DNA of 64,000 bases from IMGVR_UViG_3300046513_000348:154661-218660, one strand, 5' to 3'. Counted from the first letter of the stretch, positions 4,648 to 55,554 are shown. Notes: a model not told the origin generated them from the sequence alone. A program made the numbers and translations.

Positions 4648-4666
4648 ATGATATATTCGTGAAAAA
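4648..4666 (-). promoter_or_regulatory. Putative early (virion RNAP) promoter
   Basis: Minus strand TTTTTTCACGAATATATCAT. Resembles the phiKZ early consensus TATATTAC and recurs at nine intergenic sites. Confidence 0.65.
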
Positions 4667-11209: not shown

Positions 11210-11229
11210 ATGATATATTGATGTAAATT
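11210..11229 (-). promoter_or_regulatory. Putative early promoter
   Basis: Minus strand AATTTACATCAATATATCAT. Confidence 0.65.
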
Positions 11230-23173: not shown

Positions 23174-23192
23174 ATGATATATTCTTAAAAAT
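23174..23192 (-). promoter_or_regulatory. Putative early promoter
   Basis: Minus strand ATTTTTAAGAATATATCAT. Confidence 0.65.
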
Positions 23193-23287: not shown

Positions 23288-25507
23288 TTACGGCGCCGGC
23301 GCCGGCTCGGTCGTGTTCTCGATCGAGAGCACGGCCTTCTGGGTCAGGGCCTGCTGCAGGTTCTTCACGGTCACCACGCCCAGGATCGGGGTCAGCGGGA
23401 TGTGACGGAACGACGGGTGAACGATCAGTTCACGCGAGTGGCTGCCACGGCTCAGGTTCAGAGCGGCGACGACTTCCGGCTTGTTGATCATCATGCCGTG
23501 ATCCAGAGGGTGCGGAACACCCGGGTTGGCCGACGGGTAGCCCAGGGCGATGAAGATCTTGTCGTAGACGCGGCGGTCCGGGGTCGAAGCTTTCTCGTAG
23601 GAGAAGTCCGGGCCCATGGTGCGGGTGTCGCCGTTGATCTTCAGGTACTGGGTCAGCACCATGTCGGTACCGAGCTTGACGACCGGCAGGGCGGCTTCCG
23701 TGCCTTCCAGCAGGTTCGCCGCAGCTTGCCAGTTCGACTTCTGCCACAGCTTGTAGGCCACGATGGTGCAGGTGTCGGTCAGGATCGAGGTGATGTCGTC
23801 GTAGCGCTGATGCTGCGCGGTCGTGGTAACTTCCGCGGCCAGGTCCAGTTCGACTTCTTCCAGGACCGGCTCGACCAGGTAGGACGAGATGCCCATGATT
23901 TCCGGCTGACGGCCGACGATGTCCGAACGCTTGCTGTACTGGCGCAGGCTTTCGACTTCGCTCAGCAGCTGGGTCACGGCCAGGTTCGACTGGCGAACCT
24001 TGCACAGGTACGACAGCGCAGCAGCGTGCAGCGCGTCTTGTGCATCGCCGTTGGTGATCGGACGCTGCACGGACAGCGGCGAACCCAGCGACACGCCGTA
24101 CACCTGGCGGTAGGTGTTGAAGTCAGCCAGCTGGCCCAGTTCACGCAGCGAGCTGTTGACCTTACGTGCGTCGATGTCGACGCCGATGATCTTGGCAGTT
24201 GCGAACAGCTCGACCATCGCGGCATTGCCGGCGGCCGACAGGTCGACCGGCTGGCCCAGGGCGTTCTTCACGGTGTTGGCGAAGACGGAACCGGTGATGA
24301 TCTCGTAGGACGAATCCTGCAGGTTGATGTCGCCGTTGATCTTGAAGGTCAGCCATGCGGTCGAAGCGTTGTCGCCCTGGAAGGCGGTCAGCAGTTCGGA
24401 CACGCCGCCGTTGAACAGCGAGGTGTTCTTGCCGATGGTTGCAGCGTCGGTATTGAACGCCAGGTCCATACGACGGGTCAGACCCTGCTGGCCTTCGACG
24501 AACTGGTTCATCGGGCTGTTGCGGGTGTCGATACGGACGACTTCCTTCTTCGTACCGTCGGCGTTCTGGAACTGGATGTACACGCCGGTCAGGACAGCAC
24601 CCGGGTCCAGTGCGTCGGTCTGGTCCAGCACGCCCTTGGCCAGCTGCGCGTCGGTTTGTGCCAGGCGGAACAGCGAAGCGCGGTAGTTCACCTTCAGCGG
24701 TGCGGTCTGCACGCCGGTGCCGTCTTCGAGGGTCACGGCGTACGGCGCCACCAGGGCCGGGTCGACGAACGCATCCTTGGTCTGCTCGCGGACGATCGGG
24801 ACGATCTTCAGCGTGTCGTTCTTCAGGATGGTGTGGTCGATTTCAGCGTTGACGATGTTGCGACGGTTGAAGTCGGTCAGGCGCTTTTCCAGCTCGTGAC
24901 GGACCTGGTCGTGCACGGAAATCAGCGGGATTTCCATTTCGATCGCGTACTGGTCCGGCGACAGGTTGACGGTCTTGTAGAACATCTCGCCGAACTTGTT
25001 CTGGGTGGCGGTAGCCAGCGCGAACGCAGCGGTGAAGTTCAGGGTTTCGTCGTTCGGCTTGGTGTCGTACGCTTCCAGCGACTTCTGGCCCAGCTTGGTC
25101 GGATCGACGCCGCTGTGGTCCGGAATGAACACGTCGAACGGGCCGCTCGACTTGTGCTGGTTCTTGTTGCCCTGGCGCAGGATGTGCGCTTTCGGGTTCA
25201 TTGCCGAAGCCAGCGCGAAGCGGACGGCTTCCTGCTGCTGCGGGGTGATGTCGCTGGTGCCGGCTTTCGGGTGGATGCGGGTGAACGACTCGATCGACAC
25301 TTGCAGGGTGTCCAGCATGCCGGCGGCGTCGTCTTCCTGGCCTTGGGTGAACGACTCGTTCGAGATCAGGACCATGCCCAGATCCGAGTTCGGCGTCAGG
25401 CTGCCTTCGGTGCGCAGCTGTGCGACCAGGTTGAATGCCGCATTGGCGACGTTTTGTGCTTCGACGTCAGCGCGCTTGGTGTACTTCGATTTGGAAACAA
25501 AAGCCAT
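23288..25507 (-). CDS. Major capsid protein (phiKZ gp120-like)
   Basis: About 739 aa with extreme codon bias; propeptide with SNE/SIE/SLE|AYD cleavage motifs; Q..FGEMFYKTV, GTD...YL and HPSFRHI motifs; synteny. Confidence 0.9.
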   Translation of the reverse strand: MAFVSKSKYTKRADVEAQNVANAAFNLVAQLRTEGSLTPNSDLGMVLISNESFTQGQEDDAAGMLDTLQVSIESFTRIHPKAGTSDITPQQQEAVRFALASAMNPKAHILRQGNKNQHKSSGPFDVFIPDHSGVDPTKLGQKSLEAYDTKPNDETLNFTAAFALATATQNKFGEMFYKTVNLSPDQYAIEMEIPLISVHDQVRHELEKRLTDFNRRNIVNAEIDHTILKNDTLKIVPIVREQTKDAFVDPALVAPYAVTLEDGTGVQTAPLKVNYRASLFRLAQTDAQLAKGVLDQTDALDPGAVLTGVYIQFQNADGTKKEVVRIDTRNSPMNQFVEGQQGLTRRMDLAFNTDAATIGKNTSLFNGGVSELLTAFQGDNASTAWLTFKINGDINLQDSSYEIITGSVFANTVKNALGQPVDLSAAGNAAMVELFATAKIIGVDIDARKVNSSLRELGQLADFNTYRQVYGVSLGSPLSVQRPITNGDAQDALHAAALSYLCKVRQSNLAVTQLLSEVESLRQYSKRSDIVGRQPEIMGISSYLVEPVLEEVELDLAAEVTTTAQHQRYDDITSILTDTCTIVAYKLWQKSNWQAAANLLEGTEAALPVVKLGTDMVLTQYLKINGDTRTMGPDFSYEKASTPDRRVYDKIFIALGYPSANPGVPHPLDHGMMINKPEVVAALNLSRGSHSRELIVHPSFRHIPLTPILGVVTVKNLQQALTQKAVLSIENTTEPAPAP

Positions 25508-25611
25508 GGTTATTACCTCTTTATTCCTAGGAAAAAGGTGATGGGACAAAATCTAACTCAAAACCGGTTTTGATGGCAAATACCACCAAAGTATAGATTC
25601 AAGTTCGAAAC

Positions 25612-26343: not shown

Positions 26344-27867
26344 ATGACCCCAAGACTTCTTCTTCTTAAGATCATCACTCTCTTGCATCTCGAATCGCAA
26401 ATTGCGGGCGAAAATGCAAAGTCAGTCGATTTGGCAACGGAACTTCTCGCGACCGTCAAAATCCCTGAGGCCGACGTAGGTCTCATAGATAGTGAGCGCG
26501 AGATTATTGGAGCGCTCTACAACATATGTCGCAAACTGGCAAACGCCCCTGCTGGCGATGAGCCTGATAAATCGGACCTGCTTCAAGAGGTTCGTCTGCA
26601 CTGCTCGACCGAGATCGACCTGTTCGAATCATTCAAGGAAGGTGTCATCCTCGAGTTGTCGCAAGAAGGTCTGAAAAAGCGCGTTGGCGTGATTCGAAAG
26701 GACCTGAAAGAATACCTGAACTTCGAAGCAACGAAGAAGCGTCTGTTCGATGCAGCACATACCCTTCGTTTCAAGAGCAACACGATCGAAGACATCTCGA
26801 CTTATATCCGCGAGTTGTCGACTGATCTGGAGTCGTCTGTTACCAAGTCGTCCAAGAAGGACTCGGCCATTCTCGGCGAGATCAACATGGACGATAAGGA
26901 ATCTGTCGTCAAGGCAGCTACTGCTGTTTCCAATGAGCAATCCGGTGTTGGCAAACTGAAGTATCACCTTCAGGATCTGAACGACATGTTGAACGGAGGT
27001 CAGCGCCGTGGTGAATTCGTCTTGGCGTCGGCTCTGCCGCACAACAACAAGTCGGGTTTCTCCCTGGACATCTTTGCTGGCATTGCCGTATATAACGAGC
27101 CGTATCTGTTCGATGTGACCAAGAAGCCCATGCTGCTTCGTATCTCGTTCGAAGATGACGTCGAGATGAACTTCAACCACCTCTACAAGCACTTCTGGGA
27201 ACAGGAGCATGGCGAGGTGGCAATCATGACTGGCAAGTCGACCGACGAGATTGCTCAGTACGTCATGGACAAGATGACGGTCAACGGTTGGCACGTCAGG
27301 ATGATCAAGGTCGATCCATCGCTCTGGACTATCTTCGATCTGTTTGCTTATGTTCGTGATCTGGAAGCTGAAGGTTACGAGATCGCAATGTGCATGCTGG
27401 ACTACATGCGTAAGATGCCTACTACGGGTTGCGTACAGGGCGTTGCAGGCGCTGACATCCGTGACATGGCCCGTCGTTGCCGTAACTTCTTCAACGCTCG
27501 TAAAACGGCTTTCTACACCCCGCACCAGATCTCGACTCAGGCAAAGGAAATCCAACGTTCTGTCCCGAAAGACTTCGTCAAGATGCTTCCGGGTGGTGGT
27601 TACTACGACGGCTGTAAGTCCCTGGATGCCGAAGCAGACATCGAGATCTTCCAGCACATCGAGAAACAGAACGGGTTCAGTTATCTGACCCTGCACCGTG
27701 GCAAACACCGCGGTGCTCCTGTTCTGTCTGAAGACCAGAAGTACCTCGTCTACCAATTCCACGACATCGGTGGTATCCCTCCGGACATCGGTAAGGATCG
27801 CACTGGTCTTCGTAAGGTAGGCGGTAAGCCTGCTGGTCAAGCGGACGCTGACTTCGACTGGATGTAA
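26344..27867 (+). CDS. DnaB-like replicative helicase (phiKZ gp118-like)
   Basis: LNDMLNGGQRRGE, variant Walker A ALPHNNKS, ISFED, MLDY, TPHQIS and RGKHRG motifs. Confidence 0.9.
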   Translation: MTPRLLLLKIITLLHLESQIAGENAKSVDLATELLATVKIPEADVGLIDSEREIIGALYNICRKLANAPAGDEPDKSDLLQEVRLHCSTEIDLFESFKEGVILELSQEGLKKRVGVIRKDLKEYLNFEATKKRLFDAAHTLRFKSNTIEDISTYIRELSTDLESSVTKSSKKDSAILGEINMDDKESVVKAATAVSNEQSGVGKLKYHLQDLNDMLNGGQRRGEFVLASALPHNNKSGFSLDIFAGIAVYNEPYLFDVTKKPMLLRISFEDDVEMNFNHLYKHFWEQEHGEVAIMTGKSTDEIAQYVMDKMTVNGWHVRMIKVDPSLWTIFDLFAYVRDLEAEGYEIAMCMLDYMRKMPTTGCVQGVAGADIRDMARRCRNFFNARKTAFYTPHQISTQAKEIQRSVPKDFVKMLPGGGYYDGCKSLDAEADIEIFQHIEKQNGFSYLTLHRGKHRGAPVLSEDQKYLVYQFHDIGGIPPDIGKDRTGLRKVGGKPAGQADADFDWM

Positions 27868-27889: not shown

Positions 27890-27914
27890 TCTCCTACCCC
27901 GCAAGGGGTAGGAG
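27890..27914. terminator. Terminator between convergent genes
   Basis: CTCCTACCCC-GCAA-GGGGTAGGAG hairpin. Confidence 0.85.
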
Positions 27915-27923
27915 TTCTCTGCC

Positions 27924-28277
27924 CTATGCTGTCTTCTTAGGACGATTCAACCAATGCTTCTTGCAGTACTTTCCTTGTTCTCGAGCAACAAGATCGCAGA
28001 AAGACCTGGTGAGGCGATACCCCTCTTTATCATCCAGCCACTTGGTCTCGATGACGCCCTCACCGATGAACTTGTGCAGGATAGGCGGGAACATACACAG
28101 ATTGTTTCCACTTACCCCGAAATGCCCTGCGATTTCGAGCATGGTCTGCCATACTTCGCGATTGTTGTTCAGGAAACGAAGCAACTTAATCTCGTCATAG
28201 GAAGTTTGGTCTTGGAAGACCATTGGGGTGAAGATGGCTGTTGCCAACTCCACCCGCTGGCTCATAGCCGCAGCCAT
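27924..28277 (-). CDS. Putative winged-helix domain protein
   Basis: KLLRFL..WQTMLEIAGHF..ILHKFIGEGVIE..GYRLT pattern. Confidence 0.6.
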   Translation of the reverse strand: MAAAMSQRVELATAIFTPMVFQDQTSYDEIKLLRFLNNNREVWQTMLEIAGHFGVSGNNLCMFPPILHKFIGEGVIETKWLDDKEGYRLTRSFCDLVAREQGKYCKKHWLNRPKKTA

Positions 28278-29636
28278 TTACACATCCAGGCCGTAGAACT
28301 TGGCGTTCCGCAGGAACTGCTGGGCACGCTCAGTGCCGAAGACGATGCCGTGAGATTCGAAGGTCGGCTTGACGCCAGGATTGCGCTCAGCGTAGGCCAG
28401 GAAGTCGTTCGCTGCTTGAGCGATGGTTCGGACATCGTCAACATTCAGCGACTGTCCGAACACAGCGATACTCACGCTCAAGACGGCAGGATCCGGCTGG
28501 AAGTCATCGCCCAGATCCGTACTTTCCATGAGTTTTCCGCGCGCCGTATCTTCCCCGGAGGAACCGGTTTGTCCTTGGGAAATTTTCCCATCGTTTCCCG
28601 AACGCTGATTGTCACGCAACGACATCGGAGTATCGACAGTGCTGCGGCCTTGGCTGTCCGACTGGCCCGGCGTATTACTGCGACCGGTCGTATCGCCTTG
28701 CATCATTGCCGAAGCAGTGCCGCGGGAATCAACCATGTCCTTGTTCAGTTCACGACCGGTTTCCTGACGATACTGATCGGCTGCCTGTCCAGTACGGCGT
28801 TCATTCGTCCCGCCTTCGTCACGACGGTCCTGCTGGCCACGCGGTTGCTGTTCGGAAGAGCCTTGTTTGTCACCCTGCTTGACATTTTCCATCAGCTGAC
28901 GGAACGGCATGGTCACGACGTACAGGTCACCATTCGATGCCGGGATCTTGTCGATGACGCCGCGTTGTTGCAGGTCCTTGGACAATGCCATGAACAGGGA
29001 AGCCCGATCGCCGCGAACATCGAACTTGTTCGAGATGGTATCGAAGTTGACGCCCTGAGCGTTCTGATCGTAGATAGCACGCACGAGATTGACTTCTTCG
29101 TCCATGGAGCTGACTTCGCCGCCGACCACGTTCTTGGCCAGTTCCATGTTTTCCTTCGTGCTGATCTTCTCTACATGCTCTTCGAACTTACTGCGGGTCG
29201 TTTTGTTCTGGTCCTTGTTACCAGTCTGGTCCGATGCTTTTTGGATCGAGCCCTGGTTGGTTGCGTCTTGACGATTACCTTTGTCCATGTCGTTCTCCTT
29301 CGTTTCGTTGTTGGCTGCCTTGAGGTCCGGATTGTATTCACGCATCAATTCGATCATGTCCGGCGTGAAGCGGATGCGATCGATCGAACCGAACTCGTAC
29401 TTGTCGATGATGCCGTTCGTCTGCAGCATGTCGATGCCCGACGAGATCATCTCAGTGTCGAAGCCTTGATTCTGGAAGTGTTGAGAAAGCTCCTTGTAAC
29501 TGACGCTACCGCACTCCAGGATTTCCTTGCCGTATTTCACGACAGTGGCCGGTAGTAAGTGAGTGTCTTCGGTTGCGAGAGCGCTGGCAAGAGCACAGAT
29601 CTGAGGGTCTTGTTTATTGAGTGAGTTTTTATTCAT
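28278..29636 (-). CDS. Protein with two putative winged-helix domains, low-complexity linkers and a C-terminal domain
   Basis: VSYKELSQHF..IDMLQTNGIIDK and VNFDTISNKF..KDLQQRGVIDK..LYVVT, separated by Q/N/D/G/R-rich spacers. Confidence 0.65.
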   Translation of the reverse strand: MNKNSLNKQDPQICALASALATEDTHLLPATVVKYGKEILECGSVSYKELSQHFQNQGFDTEMISSGIDMLQTNGIIDKYEFGSIDRIRFTPDMIELMREYNPDLKAANNETKENDMDKGNRQDATNQGSIQKASDQTGNKDQNKTTRSKFEEHVEKISTKENMELAKNVVGGEVSSMDEEVNLVRAIYDQNAQGVNFDTISNKFDVRGDRASLFMALSKDLQQRGVIDKIPASNGDLYVVTMPFRQLMENVKQGDKQGSSEQQPRGQQDRRDEGGTNERRTGQAADQYRQETGRELNKDMVDSRGTASAMMQGDTTGRSNTPGQSDSQGRSTVDTPMSLRDNQRSGNDGKISQGQTGSSGEDTARGKLMESTDLGDDFQPDPAVLSVSIAVFGQSLNVDDVRTIAQAANDFLAYAERNPGVKPTFESHGIVFGTERAQQFLRNAKFYGLDV

Positions 29637-29683
29637 CGTCTTCCTTTATTAAAAAGTGGTTTTGTACTCTCTCAGGACTTCTT

Positions 29684-30205
29684 TTAAAACAACCGCAGTT
29701 CGCGGAGTTTCTTGAGAAGCTCTTCGGCCTCTTCTTTTTCCAAAGGAACCGGCCCAACTTTGAAGTTCGTTATATCGGGCAGGTTTCGTACGACAGTTGA
29801 AGTCGTCTTATAAAAATCGATCAGCTTCTCAATTGGGACTTCATAGCCCTTTATCTTTACCGTTATTTCCAGAAGAGACTCTAACGATTCGAAAGGGACA
29901 CTGAAGTACTCGTAGAAGGGCGTCGTGATGCGATAAGTCGCCGGTCTGATACTGGCCTCAGCGGCCTGCTCGACTATACCTTGCATAATGAGACTTTCGA
30001 CTGCCCTCTGGATCTTCTCGGCTTCGCTGCGACTGGGACCAAAAATTCTATCGGTCAGATCGCGAACCGATTGAGGTTCGTTTGCTTCCCGATAGAGAAT
30101 CTGAACCACGATCATTTCAGCATTCCATTTCATGCCGAAAGTACCGTGGCGGGCCGCTCGCTTAAAACCAGTGGACTGTTGGGAACCTGGTTCGATCGCG
30201 TTCAT
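29684..30205 (-). CDS. Putative winged-helix protein with a C-terminal domain paralogous to that of 28278-29636
   Basis: PQSVRDLTDRI..IQRAVESLIMQGIVE..TYRIT pattern. Confidence 0.65.
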   Translation of the reverse strand: MNAIEPGSQQSTGFKRAARHGTFGMKWNAEMIVVQILYREANEPQSVRDLTDRIFGPSRSEAEKIQRAVESLIMQGIVEQAAEASIRPATYRITTPFYEYFSVPFESLESLLEITVKIKGYEVPIEKLIDFYKTTSTVVRNLPDITNFKVGPVPLEKEEAEELLKKLRELRLF

Positions 30206-30594
30206 GGCATCTCAACGAACGGCGTTTCCTTCACTTCTTCCACCAGCGCCCTCATGTCTTCCGTCAGTTGATAGCCCTTGCCCTTGACGCTCGAGATCAC
30301 GCCTTCGCCGACCAATTCGAGCATCAGGCGGGTGATGAGTTCGTACGGCGTGAAGACCTTGTTCTCGCGCATGCGCTTGAGAATCAGGTTTTCGGAAACC
30401 GGTTTCTGCGATTTGTGAATCAGATTCACGACGAACTGCGAAGCCGTGAAGTCGGACCATTTGACTTCTGCGGTTTCGTTCAGGAGAACCTTCTTCGGGT
30501 TCTCATGGGCGTATTCCATTTTGAGCCACGCGCGTTCAGCGATACGCTTGATACGGTTGAAGGAACGTGCTTCGCGATCAATTTTGCCCCACAT
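30202..30594 (-). CDS. Putative winged-helix protein
   Basis: KPVSENLILKRM..ITRLMLELVGEGVISS..GYQLT pattern; AAGGAG before MWGK. Confidence 0.65.
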   Translation of the reverse strand: MWGKIDREARSFNRIKRIAERAWLKMEYAHENPKKVLLNETAEVKWSDFTASQFVVNLIHKSQKPVSENLILKRMRENKVFTPYELITRLMLELVGEGVISSVKGKGYQLTEDMRALVEEVKETPFVEMP

Positions 30595-30634
30595 TTTGAA
30601 ACTCCTTATGACATTGTAAAAGTACTTCACTGCG

Positions 30635-30653
30635 GTAATATGTGTCTGAAAAT
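30635..30653 (-). promoter_or_regulatory. Putative early promoter variant
   Basis: Minus strand TTTTCAGACACATATTAC. Confidence 0.5.
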
Positions 30654-30704
30654 AAACAGCATAAGACCAGACCTGGGCTTATCGCCCAGGTCTGGTTTCT
30701 GACG

Positions 30705-31028
30705 TCAATAGACGGGTACTTTGTTCCGCACCATCATGTCGATGATGACTCGAGTGTGGTAGCGGGACGATGCTTCGTTGTAGAGACGCTTGTGGTTAAT
30801 GGCATAAACACGGCGCTTTACCAAATAGTCAGGGAGTGTTACGTCCCGTACTTTCAGGTAACCTTTCCGAACGAGACCGTCCAGAATACTGACGACCTCA
30901 CTCGAATTGATTTTTGTTTTGGACTTGAGAAGGACGTCAGACGAAGTCATTTCGACCCCGTACGGCAGCAGAACAATTTCCACTACCAGCTGTTCCAATT
31001 CCGATAGTTGGTTTTTATCCGGTAACAT
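30705..31028 (-). CDS. Putative winged-helix protein
   Basis: MTSSDVL..EVVSILDGLVRKGYLKV..RVYAIN pattern. Confidence 0.6.
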   Translation of the reverse strand: MLPDKNQLSELEQLVVEIVLLPYGVEMTSSDVLLKSKTKINSSEVVSILDGLVRKGYLKVRDVTLPDYLVKRRVYAINHKRLYNEASSRYHTRVIIDMMVRNKVPVY

Positions 31029-31171
31029 TTTTGTTTAACGATTGGAAGGTTTTTTAAAATGCATGGTTAATGCATGACTTGGCTTTTCTCTCTCAGAGCT
31101 ACCACCATAAAATTTCTCTGCGGCAACTAAAAAAAAAATCCTACTCCGAGTTATGGAGTAGGGCTGTAGGC

Positions 31172-31342
31172 CTATGCCTTTTTCTTTCGGTCAGATTTCA
31201 CGGGAGGTTTGGTTTCATACTTCTCCGCGTCTTCCATGAGTTTCCGAGCTTCACCTGTGGTCATGTTATTCTTCCGAGCAATCTCTTCGCTGTGAGCGGC
31301 TGCTCTGAAAAGGCGTTTCTGTTTCTCAGTGTATGGGGGCAT
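31172..31342 (-). CDS. Small basic protein (MPPYTEKQKRLFRAAAH type)
   Basis: 56 aa; perfect AAGGAGG Shine-Dalgarno lying inside the HNH gene 3' end. Confidence 0.7.
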   Translation of the reverse strand: MPPYTEKQKRLFRAAAHSEEIARKNNMTTGEARKLMEDAEKYETKPPVKSDRKKKA

Positions 31343-32120
31343 TTCGAACCTCCTTATCACGGTCAATAATACCTAACGCTATTGCGTCAAGAATACCTAG
31401 TCCTCTTTCGATCCGTAGATGAAGAGTCCTTCGTTTGATATTGAACTTTCGAGCACATTGAGGAACGCTAAGAAGCTCACCTGCCACGTCGTATAACCTT
31501 ATCGCCGGTTTCGTCAAAGCTCTCTCGATACTCCATCCCTTATTTACGCGTTCGAGAACCAGCTGCGGATTCTGATTGTATTTTCTTGCCAACTGAGAAA
31601 CCGTTAGACTTTCGCCTTTGTACTCGATCACGCGATTATTTCTACGGTTGTTCTGCTGCTCTTCTTCAGTCGCCCAACGGCAATTATTCGGTTCGTAATT
31701 TCCGTCTGGATTCTTCCGGTCCAGTGTATGGCGTGGAGTGGGCTTTGACCCCATGTCTTTGAAGAACTCTTCAAACGAATTTCGCCACCTCTTACAGACC
31801 TTAATACCCCGCCCACCGTAAGCACTATAGCCAATGGTCTTAGGATTCAAGCAACGGTTCTTCATATTGACCCAGGACGAATATTCCGAGCTTTTTATCT
31901 GTCCGTGGATGAACTTGGCATCGCTCGTTCTTTCTTTCTGGAGACAGCCGCAGCTTTGAGTTATGCCGCCTTTGAGACGATACGTTGGTACGAAAACGGG
32001 ATTACCGCATTCGCATTTGCATAGCCAGTATGCCTTTTCGTTTTTAATTTCCTTGAACTCAATGACGGTCAGGCGGCCAAACTTTTCACCTACCAACTCC
32101 GCCCGTTTGTTAAACGTCAT
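31326..32120 (-). CDS. Free-standing HNH homing endonuclease
   Basis: FGRLTV, WLCKCECG, SCGC, W.NMK.RC, YGGRGIKVC.RW and TLDR..PDGNYEPNNCRWAT motifs; AT-rich. Confidence 0.88.
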   Translation of the reverse strand: MTFNKRAELVGEKFGRLTVIEFKEIKNEKAYWLCKCECGNPVFVPTYRLKGGITQSCGCLQKERTSDAKFIHGQIKSSEYSSWVNMKNRCLNPKTIGYSAYGGRGIKVCKRWRNSFEEFFKDMGSKPTPRHTLDRKNPDGNYEPNNCRWATEEEQQNNRRNNRVIEYKGESLTVSQLARKYNQNPQLVLERVNKGWSIERALTKPAIRLYDVAGELLSVPQCARKFNIKRRTLHLRIERGLGILDAIALGIIDRDKEVRNAPIH

Positions 32121-32204: not shown

Positions 32205-32549
32205 TTAGCGATTCCCGCCGCGTCCACCGCTATTACCACCACCACGATTACCGCCTCCGCGGTTACCGCCATCGTTACCGCCGCGATTACCTCCACGGCG
32301 AGTTTCTTCGTTACGGTTACCGGACTGACGGCTGTCTCGACCCCTCACGGAATCTTCCATGTTTTTACCGCGGTTGTGCACCGTGTCTTCCACATCTTCA
32401 CCGCGAGTGTGGATAAAGTCGGCGACACCGTCGCGCACCCTGCCCACTGCTCTCCCGATGCCGCCGAAGATACCGCCATTGTCACCACCGTTGTCACCAT
32501 TGTCACGGCGACCATCATCACGATTGTCGTTGTTGGTATTACGAGCCAT
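32205..32549 (-). CDS. Small intrinsically disordered RGG/NG-rich protein
   Basis: GGAGG Shine-Dalgarno; flanked by hairpins; GGNRGG repeats. Confidence 0.75.
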   Translation of the reverse strand: MARNTNNDNRDDGRRDNGDNGGDNGGIFGGIGRAVGRVRDGVADFIHTRGEDVEDTVHNRGKNMEDSVRGRDSRQSGNRNEETRRGGNRGGNDGGNRGGGNRGGGNSGGRGGNR

Positions 32550-32668: not shown

Positions 32669-32968
32669 TTATTGGGTACTGAGTGCCTGAATGCCAAATC
32701 GAGCCGACTGCCATGGATACGGCTCGAGGTTCACCTTATGCTCGATGCACAGGGTGTTCGCGAGTTCAGTGGCGTCGCGTTCGAAGTCCCTGTCGTCGAC
32801 ATGCTTCACATCGCCGTTCTGGAAGCGGAGGAACACCGAATAGAACTCGGTATCTTTATCTGCACCCATCACCTGCGTTTCCACAGTACGCTTCTTCCCT
32901 GCTTCTTCGGGTTCGACCCATTTGGCAGGGAGGACTTGAATCGAAACTACTGTACCTTTGTTGCTCAT
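32669..32968 (-). CDS. Hypothetical protein
   Basis: ORF between hairpins; AAGG Shine-Dalgarno. Confidence 0.65.
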   Translation of the reverse strand: MSNKGTVVSIQVLPAKWVEPEEAGKKRTVETQVMGADKDTEFYSVFLRFQNGDVKHVDDRDFERDATELANTLCIEHKVNLEPYPWQSARFGIQALSTQ

Positions 32969-35427: not shown

Positions 35428-35489
35428 TTTCAAACTCCTTCTTTCAAAAAACAATAACTGTAATTCGATTTACTGTCATTGTCAATGCG

Positions 35490-35508
35490 GTAATATATTT
35501 ATAACAAT
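35490..35508 (-). promoter_or_regulatory. Putative early promoter
   Basis: Exact TATATTAC on the minus strand. Confidence 0.65.
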
Positions 35509-41426: not shown

Positions 41427-41445
41427 ATGATATATTTCCAAAATA
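41427..41445 (-). promoter_or_regulatory. Putative early promoter
   Basis: Minus strand TATTTTGGAAATATATCAT. Confidence 0.6.
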
Positions 41446-45336: not shown

Positions 45337-45353
45337 ATGATATATCGATGAAA
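45337..45353 (-). promoter_or_regulatory. Putative early promoter
   Basis: Minus strand TTTCATCGATATATCAT. Confidence 0.6.
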
Positions 45354-47170: not shown

Positions 47171-47191
47171 GTAATATATAGCTGTTGAAAT
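47171..47191 (-). promoter_or_regulatory. Putative early promoter
   Basis: Exact TATATTAC with upstream TTTCA on the minus strand. Confidence 0.65.
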
Positions 47192-55447: not shown

Positions 55448-55554
55448 TATGGTAAATTACGTAACTACTTCAATTTCGTTATATATTGCTGAAATTATCT
55501 ACATACGGACATAAACCAGGATAGGGCGAAAGCCCTATCCTGATCTACTTTTGT

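What the first reader, a model, noticed from the sequence alone, without database searches (positions are those of the whole stretch)
27924..31028. Tandem array of five divergent winged-helix genes (six wHTH domains) beside the replicative helicase
Seen: five consecutive unannotated minus-strand ORFs each show the same pattern of helix, 'x-S/T-x-x-E/D-L/I' helix, recognition helix ending 'L..xG(V/I/Y)(I/V/L)', then a wing ending 'Y-x-L/I/V-T/N'. Examples: AVESLIMQGIVE..TYRIT, MLELVGEGVISS..GYQLT, LDGLVRKGYLK..VYAIN, LHKFIGEGVIE..GYRLT, plus two copies in the 452-aa protein. The 173-aa and 452-aa proteins also share an apparent C-terminal domain (LEITVKIKGYEVPIEKL...EEAEELLKKLRELRLF vs LSVSIAVFGQSLNVDDV...ERAQQFLRNAKFYGLD), which implies local paralog expansion. 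Inference: this is a dedicated multi-component module. Options include a phage nucleoid/chromatin organiser, a Z-alpha-like nucleic-acid-shape sensor set, or kite/ESCRT-II-like winged-helix scaffolds or decoys against host defence. I do not recognise it as a described phiKZ core system.
Basis: partly seen in the sequence, partly recalled or inferred. Interest (0 to 1): 0.8.

Follow-up and report, generated by a model that had tools for sequence, protein, structure and literature searches.

The report
Winged-helix paralog array in jumbo phage
Five neighbouring genes of a soil jumbo phage all encode winged-helix proteins; four are diverged copies of one family found only in this phage lineage, swapped as cassettes between close relatives and probably switched on early in infection, but what they bind is still unknown.

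Summary
The window is a Chiangmaivirus-like (RSF1/RSL2/FLC6) phiKZ-type phage from a rhizosphere metagenome. The five minus-strand ORFs beside the divergent DnaB helicase are real genes: dN/dS against the nearest relative is 0.05-0.16 for B, D and E. All five are winged-helix (wH) proteins, six wH domains in total.

A117, both domains of B452, C173 and D142 belong to one sequence superfamily. Transitive BLAST, hhalign and a converging iterative HMM with no off-target hit all agree. E107 is a separate PadR/BlaI-like wH protein. B452 and C173 share a small C-terminal domain with beta-beta-alpha-beta-beta-alpha topology.

The family is tiny (19 clusters among 1.84 billion representatives). Every copy whose surroundings could be read lies in this same genomic slot, with one to six wH domains per protein. 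A and C are cassette replacement and indel variants between close relatives (flank 96.6% identical).

D-C-B-A form one operon behind a putative early-promoter motif. E is monocistronic.

Most domain cores are acidic or neutral, which is unusual for DNA-binding wH domains.

Best reading: an early accessory host-takeover or conflict island of modular wH binders plus one regulator (E). The function is inferred, not shown. The Z-alpha, chromatin-organiser, kite and TubR readings are unsupported or only faintly hinted.

The parts
30705..31028 (-). E107: monocistronic PadR/BlaI-like winged-helix protein, pI 9.5. Present in every Chiangmaivirus-like locus examined except the short fragment L008. Not a sequence relative of A-D.
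   Evidence: ESM Atlas structure hits to Penicillinase_R, PadR and IclR clusters at TM 0.60-0.68; phrog_38069 E 1.6e-22; homologs in 11 GenBank records, all Ralstonia or Burkholderia jumbo phages; dN/dS 0.05; never recruited by the A-D HMM.
31105..31116 (-). GAAATTTTATGG element upstream of E107. Conserved in W, L007, L014 and L015 and unique in the window. Contains TATG, the phiKZ late-promoter core. Candidate promoter or operator.
   Evidence: the phiKZ late TATG motif is from PMC7598289. Function is inferred.
31140..31162 (-). Terminator-like hairpin plus T-run upstream of the E107 unit.
30667..30695 (-). Hairpin directly after the E107 stop codon. It separates E from the D-C-B-A unit.
   Evidence: Read from the sequence; conserved in position in L007, L013 and L015.
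30627..30643 (-). Putative early (virion RNA polymerase type) promoter of the D-C-B-A operon: ACATATTACCGCAGTGA.
   Evidence: One mismatch from ATATATHA, a motif with 8 exact sites against 1.18 expected, all intergenic and all on the minus strand. 15 of 17 bases identical to the site at 35498. The orthologous position in L013 and L015 reads ATATATAA. The promoter class is inferred from PMC7598289.
30202..30594 (-). D (130 aa from ATG 30594; the ORF runs to GTG 30630 = D142): basic N-terminal helix followed by a wH domain. First gene of the operon.
   Evidence: ESM Atlas: residues 59-142 match WHD_RNase_R and FCD/GntR wH clusters at TM 0.51-0.73; phrog_31738 E 1.7e-18; HMM iteration 2 E 5e-5; hhalign D~f6 94% and D~B domain 1 56%; dN/dS 0.11.
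29876..30127 (-). C173 N-terminal wH domain (about residues 27-110).
   Evidence: HMM E 3e-4; hhalign 88% to f9 and 76% to B domain 1; Pfam ScpB E 0.0014, below threshold. Its own AlphaFold2 model has low confidence.
29687..29869 (-). C173 C-terminal domain (residues 113-173), topology beta-beta-alpha-beta-beta-alpha.
   Evidence: AlphaFold2 pLDDT 68-81; homologous to the B C-terminal domain.
29684..30205 (-). C173 whole gene. Its start overlaps the D stop (ATGA). It is a cassette absent from the closest relative.
   Evidence: A 536-nt skip with 35 other letters in the L007/X3 contig.
29334..29609 (-). B452 wH domain 1 (residues 10-101), pI about 4.5.
   Evidence: AlphaFold2; hhalign 97% to f9; charge.
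28857..29189 (-). B452 wH domain 2 (residues 150-260), pI about 5.0. Paralog of A117.
   Evidence: AlphaFold2. The L008 117-aa ORF links it (E 5.9e-14) to A117 (E 2.5e-12). hhalign A~B domain 2 96.9%.
28281..28469 (-). B452 C-terminal domain (residues 390-452), topology beta-beta-alpha-beta-beta-alpha.
   Evidence: AlphaFold2 pLDDT 66-82. The B-type domain occurs in exactly one protein in each of the six W-clade loci. No PDB or Pfam match.
28278..29636 (-). B452 whole gene: wH, 45-aa disordered linker, wH, 130-aa G/S/D/Q/R-rich disordered region, C-terminal domain. Net charge -17.
   Evidence: dN/dS 0.16.
27924..28277 (-). A117: single wH domain plus a basic tail. Its start abuts the B stop (TAAATG). 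Last gene of the operon. Cassette-replaced in relatives.
   Evidence: ESM Atlas MarR, HTH_5 and PadR clusters at TM 0.57-0.70.
27891..27914 (-). Strong hairpin terminator closing the operon. It lies between the operon and the convergent helicase gene.
26344..27867 (+). Divergent DnaB-like replicative helicase. Context gene, convergent with the array.
   Evidence: Pfam divDNAB E 1.4e-114; phrog_3213 E 3e-179.

Best explanation
This is an accessory island that is specific to one phage lineage and reshuffled by recombination. It holds one expanded winged-helix (wH) family plus one unrelated wH regulator.

Shown:
- A, both B domains, C and D are diverged paralogs.
- B and C carry a common small C-terminal domain.
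- The family grows by tandem gene duplication and by duplication of the domain inside a gene, giving one to six wH domains per protein.
- The genes checked for dN/dS (B, D and E) are under purifying selection; A is too diverged between the two phages to measure, and C has no counterpart in the closest relative.
- Whole genes are exchanged as cassettes between near-identical phages.

Inferred:
- D-C-B-A are one operon, with coupled or overlapping stops and starts and a single terminator. A promoter of this phage's AT-rich early class, the type read by the virion RNA polymerase, drives it, so the proteins are made at the onset of infection.
- The wH cores are mostly acidic or neutral, and the 'recognition' helices of B and C lack basic residues. 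I therefore propose that the family acts mainly as modular binding units for proteins, or for non-duplex nucleic acid, rather than as classical operator-binding repressors.
- B and C would be multivalent adaptors: wH beads on disordered linkers, brought together through the C-terminal domain. A and D would be single-module partners with basic tails.
- The likely role is host takeover or counter-defence, with specificity diversified by cassette exchange.
- E107 is basic, the most conserved of the five against the closest relative, and has its own conserved upstream element. It is most likely a sequence-specific DNA-binding regulator.
For: - Fold.
- Paralogy.
- Shared C-terminal domain.
- Restricted distribution and fixed location: 19 clusters in 1.84e9 representatives. 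Contexts L007, L013, L014 and L015 lie beside a divDNAB-type helicase gene; L008 is a 2.4-kb fragment with no helicase in view. D and E occur only in 11 Ralstonia or Burkholderia jumbo-phage records.
- Variable domain number: P0008 and P0011 have 2 domains, P0003 has 3, and P0015 has 6 plus the C-terminal domain.
- Real genes under purifying selection, but mosaic: dN/dS 0.05-0.16; dS of B is 0.57 against 0.17-0.26 in its neighbours.
- Sharp breakpoints at 27923/28286 and 29675/30212.
- Operon anatomy and terminators.
- Promoter class: ATATATHA has 8 sites against 1.18 expected, all intergenic. One lies upstream of the operon containing the RNA-polymerase beta-like gene. The D promoter is 15/17 identical to the site at 35498. 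The rule that a conserved AT-rich motif marks early vRNAP promoters in these phages is from PMC7598289.
- Charge: B pI 4.9 (domains 4.5 and 5.0) and C 5.65. Of 65 domain copies, 29 have pI below 6, 23 lie between 6 and 8, and 13 are above 8.
- No iterons or repeated operators in or around the array.
Against: - No direct functional evidence exists. No RNA data were found for this phage.
- The nearest structural neighbours are overwhelmingly DNA-binding regulators: MarR, ArsR, PadR, BlaI, TubR.
- Whole-protein pI of A, D and E is basic, 8.8-9.5. Family f6 in the cultured relatives is strongly basic.
- D and E are present in every fuller locus examined (not in the L008 fragment), which could mean a genus-core role rather than an accessory one.
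- The early-promoter assignment is by motif analogy only.
- No known anti-defence or defence family is matched.
Confidence: 0.4

Rival explanations
1. All five are conventional sequence-specific DNA-binding transcription factors. They would time phage gene expression together with the phage's own sigma-less RNA polymerases, or repress host genes.
For: The wH fold has MarR, PadR, BlaI and ArsR as nearest structures. A, D and E are basic overall. About 92% of jumbo phages encode 1-15 specific transcription factors, mostly HTH or wHTH, possibly working with their own RNA polymerases (PMC7824862). E has a conserved upstream element and a unique ATGCAT pair.
Against: The B and C domains are acidic and their third helices lack basic residues. 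52 of 65 domain cores have pI of 8 or below. No repeated operator-like sites were found. Gene presence/absence and copy number vary between near-identical phages. No Pfam transcription-factor family reaches its threshold.
Confidence: 0.3
2. Replication-initiation or helicase-loading module. The wH proteins would be origin binders or replisome organisers that recruit the adjacent DnaB-like helicase, as lambda O, DnaD or RepA do.
For: The array sits next to the helicase wherever enough flank could be read. Weak hits exist for E107 to DnaD_N (E 0.032) and an O-like replication-initiation PHROG (E 0.093). Low-probability BFVD matches of B452 to 'replication initiator' and 'replisome organizer' models, probability 0.23-0.44.
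Against: The array is convergent with the helicase and separated from it by a terminator. No iterons were found. The family is absent beside the helicase of a 65%-identical relative, L006. A, B and C are not conserved even within the genus. All hits are far below threshold.
Confidence: 0.08
3. Kite-like tandem-wH mimics. They would bind or titrate a kleisin or SMC-type complex of the host (MukBEF, MksBEF, Wadjet or ScpAB).
For: Sub-threshold hits from three different members: C173 to ScpB (Pfam E 0.0014; TIGR00281 E 0.0068), the L014 598-aa protein to MksE (E 2.8e-4), and P0003 to DUF4194 (E 0.031). From memory, DUF4194 is the JetB/MksE-like family. The proteins have several wH domains and are acidic.
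Against: Only 3 of 52 members hit, and all are below the gathering thresholds. Foldseek top hits are not kite proteins. The B wH domains are separated by a 45-aa disordered linker rather than packed in tandem. No SMC or kleisin gene was seen among the flanking genes examined.
Confidence: 0.07
4. TubR-like adaptor. A wH protein would coat phage DNA, or a nucleus component, and couple it to the PhuZ tubulin filament.
For: TubR is the single best PDB match of the B452 model (3m8e, E 0.035, probability 1.0, TM 0.57-0.61). Chiangmaiviruses encode PhuZ (PMC11898562).
Against: The margin over the MarR and ArsR hits is negligible. No tubulin gene was found among the flanking genes scanned against Pfam or PHROGs. 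No centromere-like iterons were found. The family is hypervariable and partly dispensable.
Confidence: 0.03
5. Phage nucleoid or chromatin organiser, or Z-alpha-like sensors of nucleic-acid shape.
For: The wH fold only.
Against: The domains are acidic or neutral and variable. The family's conserved residues lie in H1 and the wing strand, not where I recall the Z-alpha N/Y/W signature.
Confidence: 0.03

Closest known systems
MarR, PadR, BlaI (Penicillinase_R) and ArsR-type winged-helix regulators
   Same: Same fold and size. They are the nearest structural neighbours of A117, E107 and the B452 domains. The 'L..L...G-h-h ... Y-x-L-T' end of helix 3 plus wing is the common wH signature.
   Different: No Pfam or NCBIfam model reaches its threshold. 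The B and C domains are acidic, with no basic residues in helix 3. There are multi-domain beads-on-a-string forms and an extra C-terminal domain. No operator repeats were found.
TubR (pBtoxis type III partition, PDB 3m8e/3m8f/3m9a)
   Same: Best PDB Foldseek match for a B452 wH domain. Also a small wH protein of a mobile element.
   Different: No adjacent tubulin gene or centromere repeats. The similarity is barely better than to MarR proteins.
Kite proteins (ScpB, MksE, MukE, and JetB/DUF4194)
   Same: Several wH domains in one chain, acidic, protein-binding wH use. Faint sequence hits from three members.
   Different: The hits are sub-threshold. The domains are separated by long disordered linkers. 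There is no SMC or kleisin partner gene. Domain number varies from 1 to 6.
Specific transcription factors and lineage-specific expansions of jumbo phages (Iyer et al. 2021, PMC7824862)
   Same: Jumbo phages commonly carry 1-15 HTH or wHTH proteins. Expansions of small nucleic-acid-binding domains are known, for example about 35 zinc-ribbon copies in Bacillus phage G.
   Different: This particular family, its C-terminal domain, its fixed location beside the helicase and its cassette exchange did not appear in the papers searched. PHROGs lists D and E as 'unknown function' and has no family for A or B.
Small wH proteins of archaeal viruses (SSV1 F-93) and Sso10a
   Same: Among the top structural matches. 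They are small viral wH proteins; from memory, their functions are largely unknown.
   Different: No sequence relationship. Different virus realm and context.

Membership tests
Winged-helix (wHTH) fold superfamily | Topology H1-(b1)-H2-H3-b2-b3 (wing) with a hydrophobic core | tested here: met
   B452 domains 1 and 2 by AlphaFold2 (pLDDT 80-90) and Foldseek (probability 0.9-1.0). A117, D142 and E107 by ESM Atlas models (pLDDT 0.61-0.73) matching wH clusters at TM 0.5-0.7. C173's own model is inconclusive, but it is homologous to the others.
One paralogous family (A, B domain 1, B domain 2, C, D) | Statistically supported sequence homology among the members | tested here: met
   A to the L008 117-aa ORF, E 2.5e-12; that ORF to B residues 173-275, E 5.9e-14. 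hhalign: f9~B domain 1 97%, A~B domain 2 97%, C~f9 88%, D~f6 94%, f6~B domain 1 79%. The iterative HMM converges with no off-target hits. E107 is not a member by sequence.
MarR/PadR/BlaI/Rrf2-type transcription regulators | Match to a family model at the curated threshold | tested here: not met
   Best hits are Rrf2 E 0.0047, Penicillinase_R E 0.074 and PadR E 0.1, all far below the cut-offs.
MarR/PadR/BlaI/Rrf2-type transcription regulators | Basic DNA-contacting helix 3 and wing, with palindromic operators nearby | tested here: inconclusive
   E107 is basic and has an ATGCAT pair upstream. The B and C domains are acidic. No repeated operators were found. DNA binding itself cannot be tested here.
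Kite proteins (ScpB/MksE/MukE/JetB) | Family-level sequence match | tested here: not met
   ScpB E 0.0014 (18.7 bits; cut-off 27.4), MksE E 2.8e-4 (21.7; cut-off 27), DUF4194 E 0.031. Only 3 of 52 members hit.
Kite proteins (ScpB/MksE/MukE/JetB) | Encoded with SMC-type ATPase and kleisin partners | tested here: not met
   None of the flanking genes scanned is SMC- or kleisin-like.
TubR | wH gene in an operon with a tubZ-like tubulin gene and centromeric iterons | tested here: not met
   No tubulin gene among the flanking genes scanned and no iterons. There is only a fold match.
Z-alpha domains | Conserved Asn/Tyr in helix 3 and Trp in the wing (signature recalled from memory) | tested here: not met
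   The family's invariant positions are an Arg in H1 and Y-x-L-T..F in the wing and C-terminal helix. No N..Y/W pattern is conserved.
Phage replication initiators and replisome organisers (lambda O, DnaD-like) | Origin iterons, plus co-conservation or co-transcription with the helicase | tested here: not met
   No iterons. The array is convergent with the helicase, with a terminator between. It is absent beside the L006 helicase. Only weak hits.
Known anti-phage defence components (PADLOC) | Match to a defence-system protein model | tested here: not met
   Only one weak hit: C173 to a CARF model, E 0.012.

The most novel reading that the evidence does not exclude
The wH-plus-C-terminal-domain proteins (B452, C173 and the six-domain 941-aa relative) are early-made, multivalent protein decoys or adaptors. 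Either they are kite-like mimics that titrate host SMC/kleisin-type complexes (Wadjet, Mks or MukBEF-like) or other wH-recognising host factors before the phage nucleus is built. Or they are the missing TubR-like link between phage DNA or the nucleus and PhuZ. In both cases the cassette exchange would track host or competitor diversity.
Probability: 0.1. Interest if true: 0.75.

Novelty: new variant of a known kind. Interest (0 to 1): 0.4.

Why it matters
Nucleus-forming jumbo phages carry a large pool of unexplained accessory genes. This analysis turns five 'hypothetical proteins' into a defined family with several useful properties:
- a recognisable fold;
- a new small C-terminal domain;
- a fixed genomic hotspot beside the helicase;
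- clear evidence of domain and gene duplication and of cassette exchange;
- a probable early expression class.

That makes the family a tractable candidate for host-takeover or counter-defence functions in phages being considered for biocontrol of Ralstonia and Burkholderia plant pathogens. It also gives a bioinformatic handle, the ATATATHA motif, on the early promoters of this phage clade. If the proteins turn out to be ordinary transcription factors, the result is still a useful annotation but not a surprise.

Tried and rejected
- Direct pairwise BLASTP among the five proteins found nothing significant (best E 0.06). Paralogy appeared only through intermediate sequences and profiles.
- Word-indexed homolog searches for A117 and C173 found only the proteins themselves. 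B452 gave two relatives.
- Profile searches of the D, E, C and C-terminal-domain families against PDB sequences gave only weak hits: TBPIP E 0.013, Cdc53 WHB E 0.026, BlaI E 0.24, ExbD E 0.027.
- The AlphaFold2 model of C173 was poor in the N-terminal domain, and its Foldseek search gave nothing usable.
- HMMER iteration from the B C-terminal domain did not recruit the C173 C-terminal domain. hhalign with deeper profiles and a shuffle control did link them.
- GAAATTTTATGG, TTTATTTTCAGA and ACATATTACC were tested as general promoter motifs and are not enriched. ATATATHA is enriched.
- Repeat search for iterons or operators found only shared ribosome-binding-site and start regions.
- PADLOC and NCBIfam gave no meaningful hits.
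- No RNA sequencing run was found that holds this phage.
- Five papers opened on RSL2/RSF1/FLC6/S13 or on jumbo phages in general say nothing about these genes.
- The 533-aa plus-strand ORF antisense to A and B (27954-29555) is rejected as a gene. The minus-strand frame is conserved, folds confidently and has dN/dS 0.16.

Full report
**Identity of the window.** Megablast places the helicase end of the region at 80-84% identity to Ralstonia phages RSF1 and RSL2 and to Burkholderia phages FLC6 and FLC8, genus Chiangmaivirus. These are phiKZ-type jumbo phages that, according to the S13 paper, encode PhuZ and a nuclear-shell protein (PMC11898562). The window itself is IMG/VR contig UViG_3300046513_000348, 218,660 bp, from a rhizosphere metagenome. 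The flanking genes are a phiKZ-type major capsid protein at 23288-25549 (Pfam PhiKZ_MCP, E 1e-182) and a divergent DnaB-like helicase at 26344-27867 (divDNAB, E 1.4e-114).

**The observation.** D most likely starts at ATG 30594, giving 130 aa. That start has an AAGGAG site and the same start-region sequence as three other genes, and the ESM Atlas record begins there.

The genes are real. Against the closest relative, a 40-kb Logan contig (L007), dN/dS is 0.16 for B (0.06 and 0.13 in the two folded domains), 0.11 for D and 0.05 for E. The helicase has 0.06. A 533-aa plus-strand ORF antisense to A and B is therefore spurious.

**Fold.**
- AlphaFold2 on B452, with seven sequences in the alignment, gives three ordered parts separated by disordered linkers. 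Residues 10-101 and 150-260 each show the helix-helix-strand-helix-helix-hairpin-helix order of a winged helix, at pLDDT about 80-90. Residues 390-448 form a small beta-beta-alpha-beta-beta-alpha domain.
- The top Foldseek PDB hits for that model are TubR, MarR-family proteins, SSV1 F-93, Sso10a and ArsR/SmtB. Probabilities are 0.9-1.0, but E-values are only 0.035-0.18 because two fifths of the query is disordered.
- In the viral library the best hit is a 104-aa RSL2 protein (TM 0.73). A 213-aa RSF1 protein also ranks high (probability 0.97). By host phage and length these are probably array proteins of the cultured relatives, but I did not map the accessions to genes.
- The ESM Atlas holds models of A117, D142 and E107 (pLDDT 0.61-0.73). 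Their structural neighbours are MarR/HTH_5/PadR clusters for A, RNase-R-WHD and FCD/GntR clusters for D, and Penicillinase_R/PadR/IclR clusters for E, at TM 0.5-0.7.
- C173's own AlphaFold2 model is poor in the N-terminal half, and its fold search was uninformative. Its wH assignment rests on homology.
- The sub-threshold Pfam hits of B, C, D and E are nearly all to wH families at the helix-3 region: ScpB, TBPIP, Rrf2, MCM5_C, DnaD_N and Penicillinase_R. The exception is B452's best hit, Sigma70_r1_1.

**Paralogy.** Direct BLASTP among the five proteins shows nothing. Intermediates do.
- A 117-aa ORF on a 2.4-kb contig (L008) matches A117 at E 2.5e-12 and B452 residues 173-275 at E 5.9e-14.
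- Profile comparisons give f9~B domain 1 97%, A~B domain 2 97%, A~f9 95.5%, D~f6 94%, C~f9 88%, f6~B domain 1 79% and C~B domain 1 76%. Families f6, f7 and f9 are array genes of the cultured relatives.
- An HMM seeded on the A/f9 family and iterated over all 1133 six-frame ORFs of 14 loci picks up C173 in round 1 (E 3e-4) and D142 in round 2 (E 5e-5). It converges in seven rounds and hits nothing outside the arrays.
- In the full 64-kb window it hits only A, B, C and D.
- E107 is never recruited. It is a wH protein by predicted structure, but not a detectable relative.

**The shared C-terminal domain.** AlphaFold2 predicts the same beta-beta-alpha-beta-beta-alpha topology at the extreme C-terminus of B452 (390-448) and C173 (115-169). 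HMMER alone does not link them. hhalign with deeper profiles does, end to end and in register with the predicted elements: 69.8% probability, E 4e-5, score 27.4. The column-shuffle null is 9.7 +/- 1.9 with a maximum of 17.7. By eye, the 941-aa relative P0015 carries an intermediate version of the sequence. The domain has no PDB or Pfam match.

**Distribution and dynamics.**
- A full HMMER scan of 1.84 billion cluster representatives finds only 19 clusters at E <= 1e-3. They include proteins with two (P0008, P0011), three (P0003) and six (P0015) wH domains.
- The contexts retrieved with enough flank lie in the same place: between the D and E genes and a divDNAB-type helicase gene of a Chiangmaivirus-like contig. 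L008 is too short to show its surroundings.
- D and E homologs occur in 11 GenBank records, all Ralstonia or Burkholderia jumbo phages.
- A relative whose helicase is 65% identical (L006) has unrelated small ORFs in that position.
- In cultured Chiangmaiviruses the order is helicase, a variable gene or genes, D, f6, f7, C, (an extra gene), E. In the window it is helicase, A, B, C, D, E. In L007 it is A', B, D, E.
- Every genome carries at least one wH protein with the C-terminal domain, of the B type or the C type.
- Between the window and L007 the flank is 96.6% identical up to the A stop codon. A has no nucleotide similarity (38-41% amino-acid identity, depending on the alignment). B is 83% identical, with dS 0.57 against 0.17-0.26 next door. 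C173 is a clean 536-nt indel. The remainder is 89% identical.
- Contigs from independent rhizosphere and soil samples show the same breakpoints.
- This is cassette exchange by recombination, not relaxed or positive selection.

**Transcription units (inferred from sequence).**
- Strong hairpin terminators lie upstream of E (31162-31140) and after A (27914-27891), and a hairpin follows the E stop (30695-30667).
- The D stop overlaps the C start (ATGA). B has its own ribosome-binding site. The B stop abuts the A start (TAAATG).
- D-C-B-A therefore look like one operon, and E looks monocistronic.
- The octamer ATATATHA occurs eight times in the window against 1.18 expected. No shuffle out of 100 reached eight. 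All sites are on the minus strand and all are intergenic.
- One site lies upstream of the operon that holds the gene annotated as an RNA-polymerase beta subunit in FLC6.
- In RNAP-encoding jumbo phages, a conserved AT-rich motif of about 10 nt upstream of early operons is the early promoter read by the virion RNA polymerase (PMC7598289).
- The D operon carries ACATATTACCGCAGTGA, one mismatch from the octamer and 15/17 identical to the site at 35498. The orthologous position in L013 and L015 reads ATATATAA.
- I therefore infer early expression of D-C-B-A.
- E instead has its own conserved GAAATTTTATGG element, which is unique in the window.

**Physical chemistry.**
- B452 is acidic: pI 4.9, domains 4.5 and 5.0, net charge -17. 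It has 45-aa and 130-aa disordered regions rich in G, S, D, Q and R. C173 has pI 5.65.
- As whole proteins A, D and E are basic, pI 8.8-9.5. For A and D this is largely due to their tails.
- Of 65 family domain cores, 29 have pI below 6, 23 lie between 6 and 8, and 13 are above 8. The basic ones are mostly family f6.
- Helix 3 of B domain 1 contains no Lys or Arg (with the boundaries).
- No iterons or operator-like repeats surround the array.

**Interpretation.** The structural and evolutionary statements are well supported; I would put them at about 0.85. The function is inference.
- I favour an early accessory island of modular wH binders used in host takeover or counter-defence. B and C would be multivalent adaptors joined through the C-terminal domain, and E a DNA-binding regulator (0.4).
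- The main rival is that all five are ordinary transcription factors for the phage programme (0.3). Jumbo phages do carry many wHTH transcription factors (PMC7824862).
- A replication-initiator or helicase-loader role is unlikely (0.08). The array is convergent with the helicase, there are no iterons, and it is not co-conserved with the helicase.
- A kite-like decoy (0.07) has only faint sub-threshold hits to ScpB, MksE and DUF4194 in 3 of 52 members.
- A TubR-like role (0.03) rests on one marginally best fold hit.
- Chromatin-organiser and Z-alpha readings are disfavoured.

**Novelty.** wH proteins and lineage-specific expansions in jumbo phages are known kinds. This family is not described in Pfam, in PHROGs (D and E are 'unknown function'; A and B have no family) or in the papers I could search. 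That covers its C-terminal domain, its variation from one to six domains, its fixed hotspot and its cassette exchange. I class it as a new variant of a known kind, of moderate interest.

Noticed in passing
window 4649-4656, 11211-11218, 23175-23182, 35491-35498, 41428-41435, 45338-45345, 47172-47179, 55479-55486 (all minus strand): ATATATHA occurs 8 times against 1.18 expected, always intergenic and upstream of minus-strand genes, often 20-30 nt after a (T)TTATG. It is probably this phage's early (virion RNA polymerase) promoter motif. One copy precedes the operon with the RNA-polymerase beta-like gene.
   Followed up: partly
window, 12 of 36 intergenic regions (e.g. 1630, 23208, 47215, 49155, 55515): TTTATG is about 10-fold enriched in intergenic DNA, and many of the intergenic copies sit directly after a GC-rich hairpin. 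It could be part of a phage-specific terminator, or a TATG-type promoter core re-initiating right after termination.
   Followed up: partly
window 31326-32120 (-): HNH homing-endonuclease gene (phrog_374, E 3.9e-71) just upstream of the array. It overlaps the start of the small f3 gene. It is present in L007 at only 77% amino-acid identity, absent from all cultured relatives, and replaced by other sequence in one soil-sample variant (X4).
   Followed up: partly
window 32205-32549 (-): 114-aa protein made largely of G/N/R/D repeats (RGG-like low complexity, pI 10.8). Conserved in L007 at dN/dS 0.11, so it is probably a real gene. No family match was sought.
   Followed up: no
window 32669-32968 (-): 99-aa ORF that corresponds only to the N-terminal 85-90 residues of the 346-534-aa proteins at the same position in cultured relatives. 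The gene is truncated or split in this lineage.
   Followed up: partly
window 27954-29555 (+): A 533-aa ORF runs antisense to A117 and B452. It is almost certainly a by-product of codon composition, because the minus-strand frame is conserved, folds well and is under purifying selection.
   Followed up: yes
window 31059-31075 (-), upstream of E107: Two ATGCAT palindromes 11 nt apart, the only such pair within 25 nt in the window. L007 keeps one copy plus a near copy, and L014 has two copies 43 nt apart. Possible operator for E107.
   Followed up: partly
window 30627-30639 and 35482-35494 (-): The D-operon promoter and the promoter upstream of a small membrane-protein gene share an extended 13-nt element, ATTACCGCAKTGA, with exactly two perfect copies in the window. 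This suggests co-regulation.
   Followed up: partly
L013:10001-12826 (P0015), L014:1272-3068, L015:3215-4498: Relatives of B452 with 2-6 wH domains plus the same C-terminal domain. Domain number changes from genome to genome.
   Followed up: partly
P0019 (526 aa): By my reading of its sequence, a DprA-like protein with three tandem C-terminal wH repeats. It matched the phage family profile at E 1.2e-5. Probably generic wH similarity.
   Followed up: no
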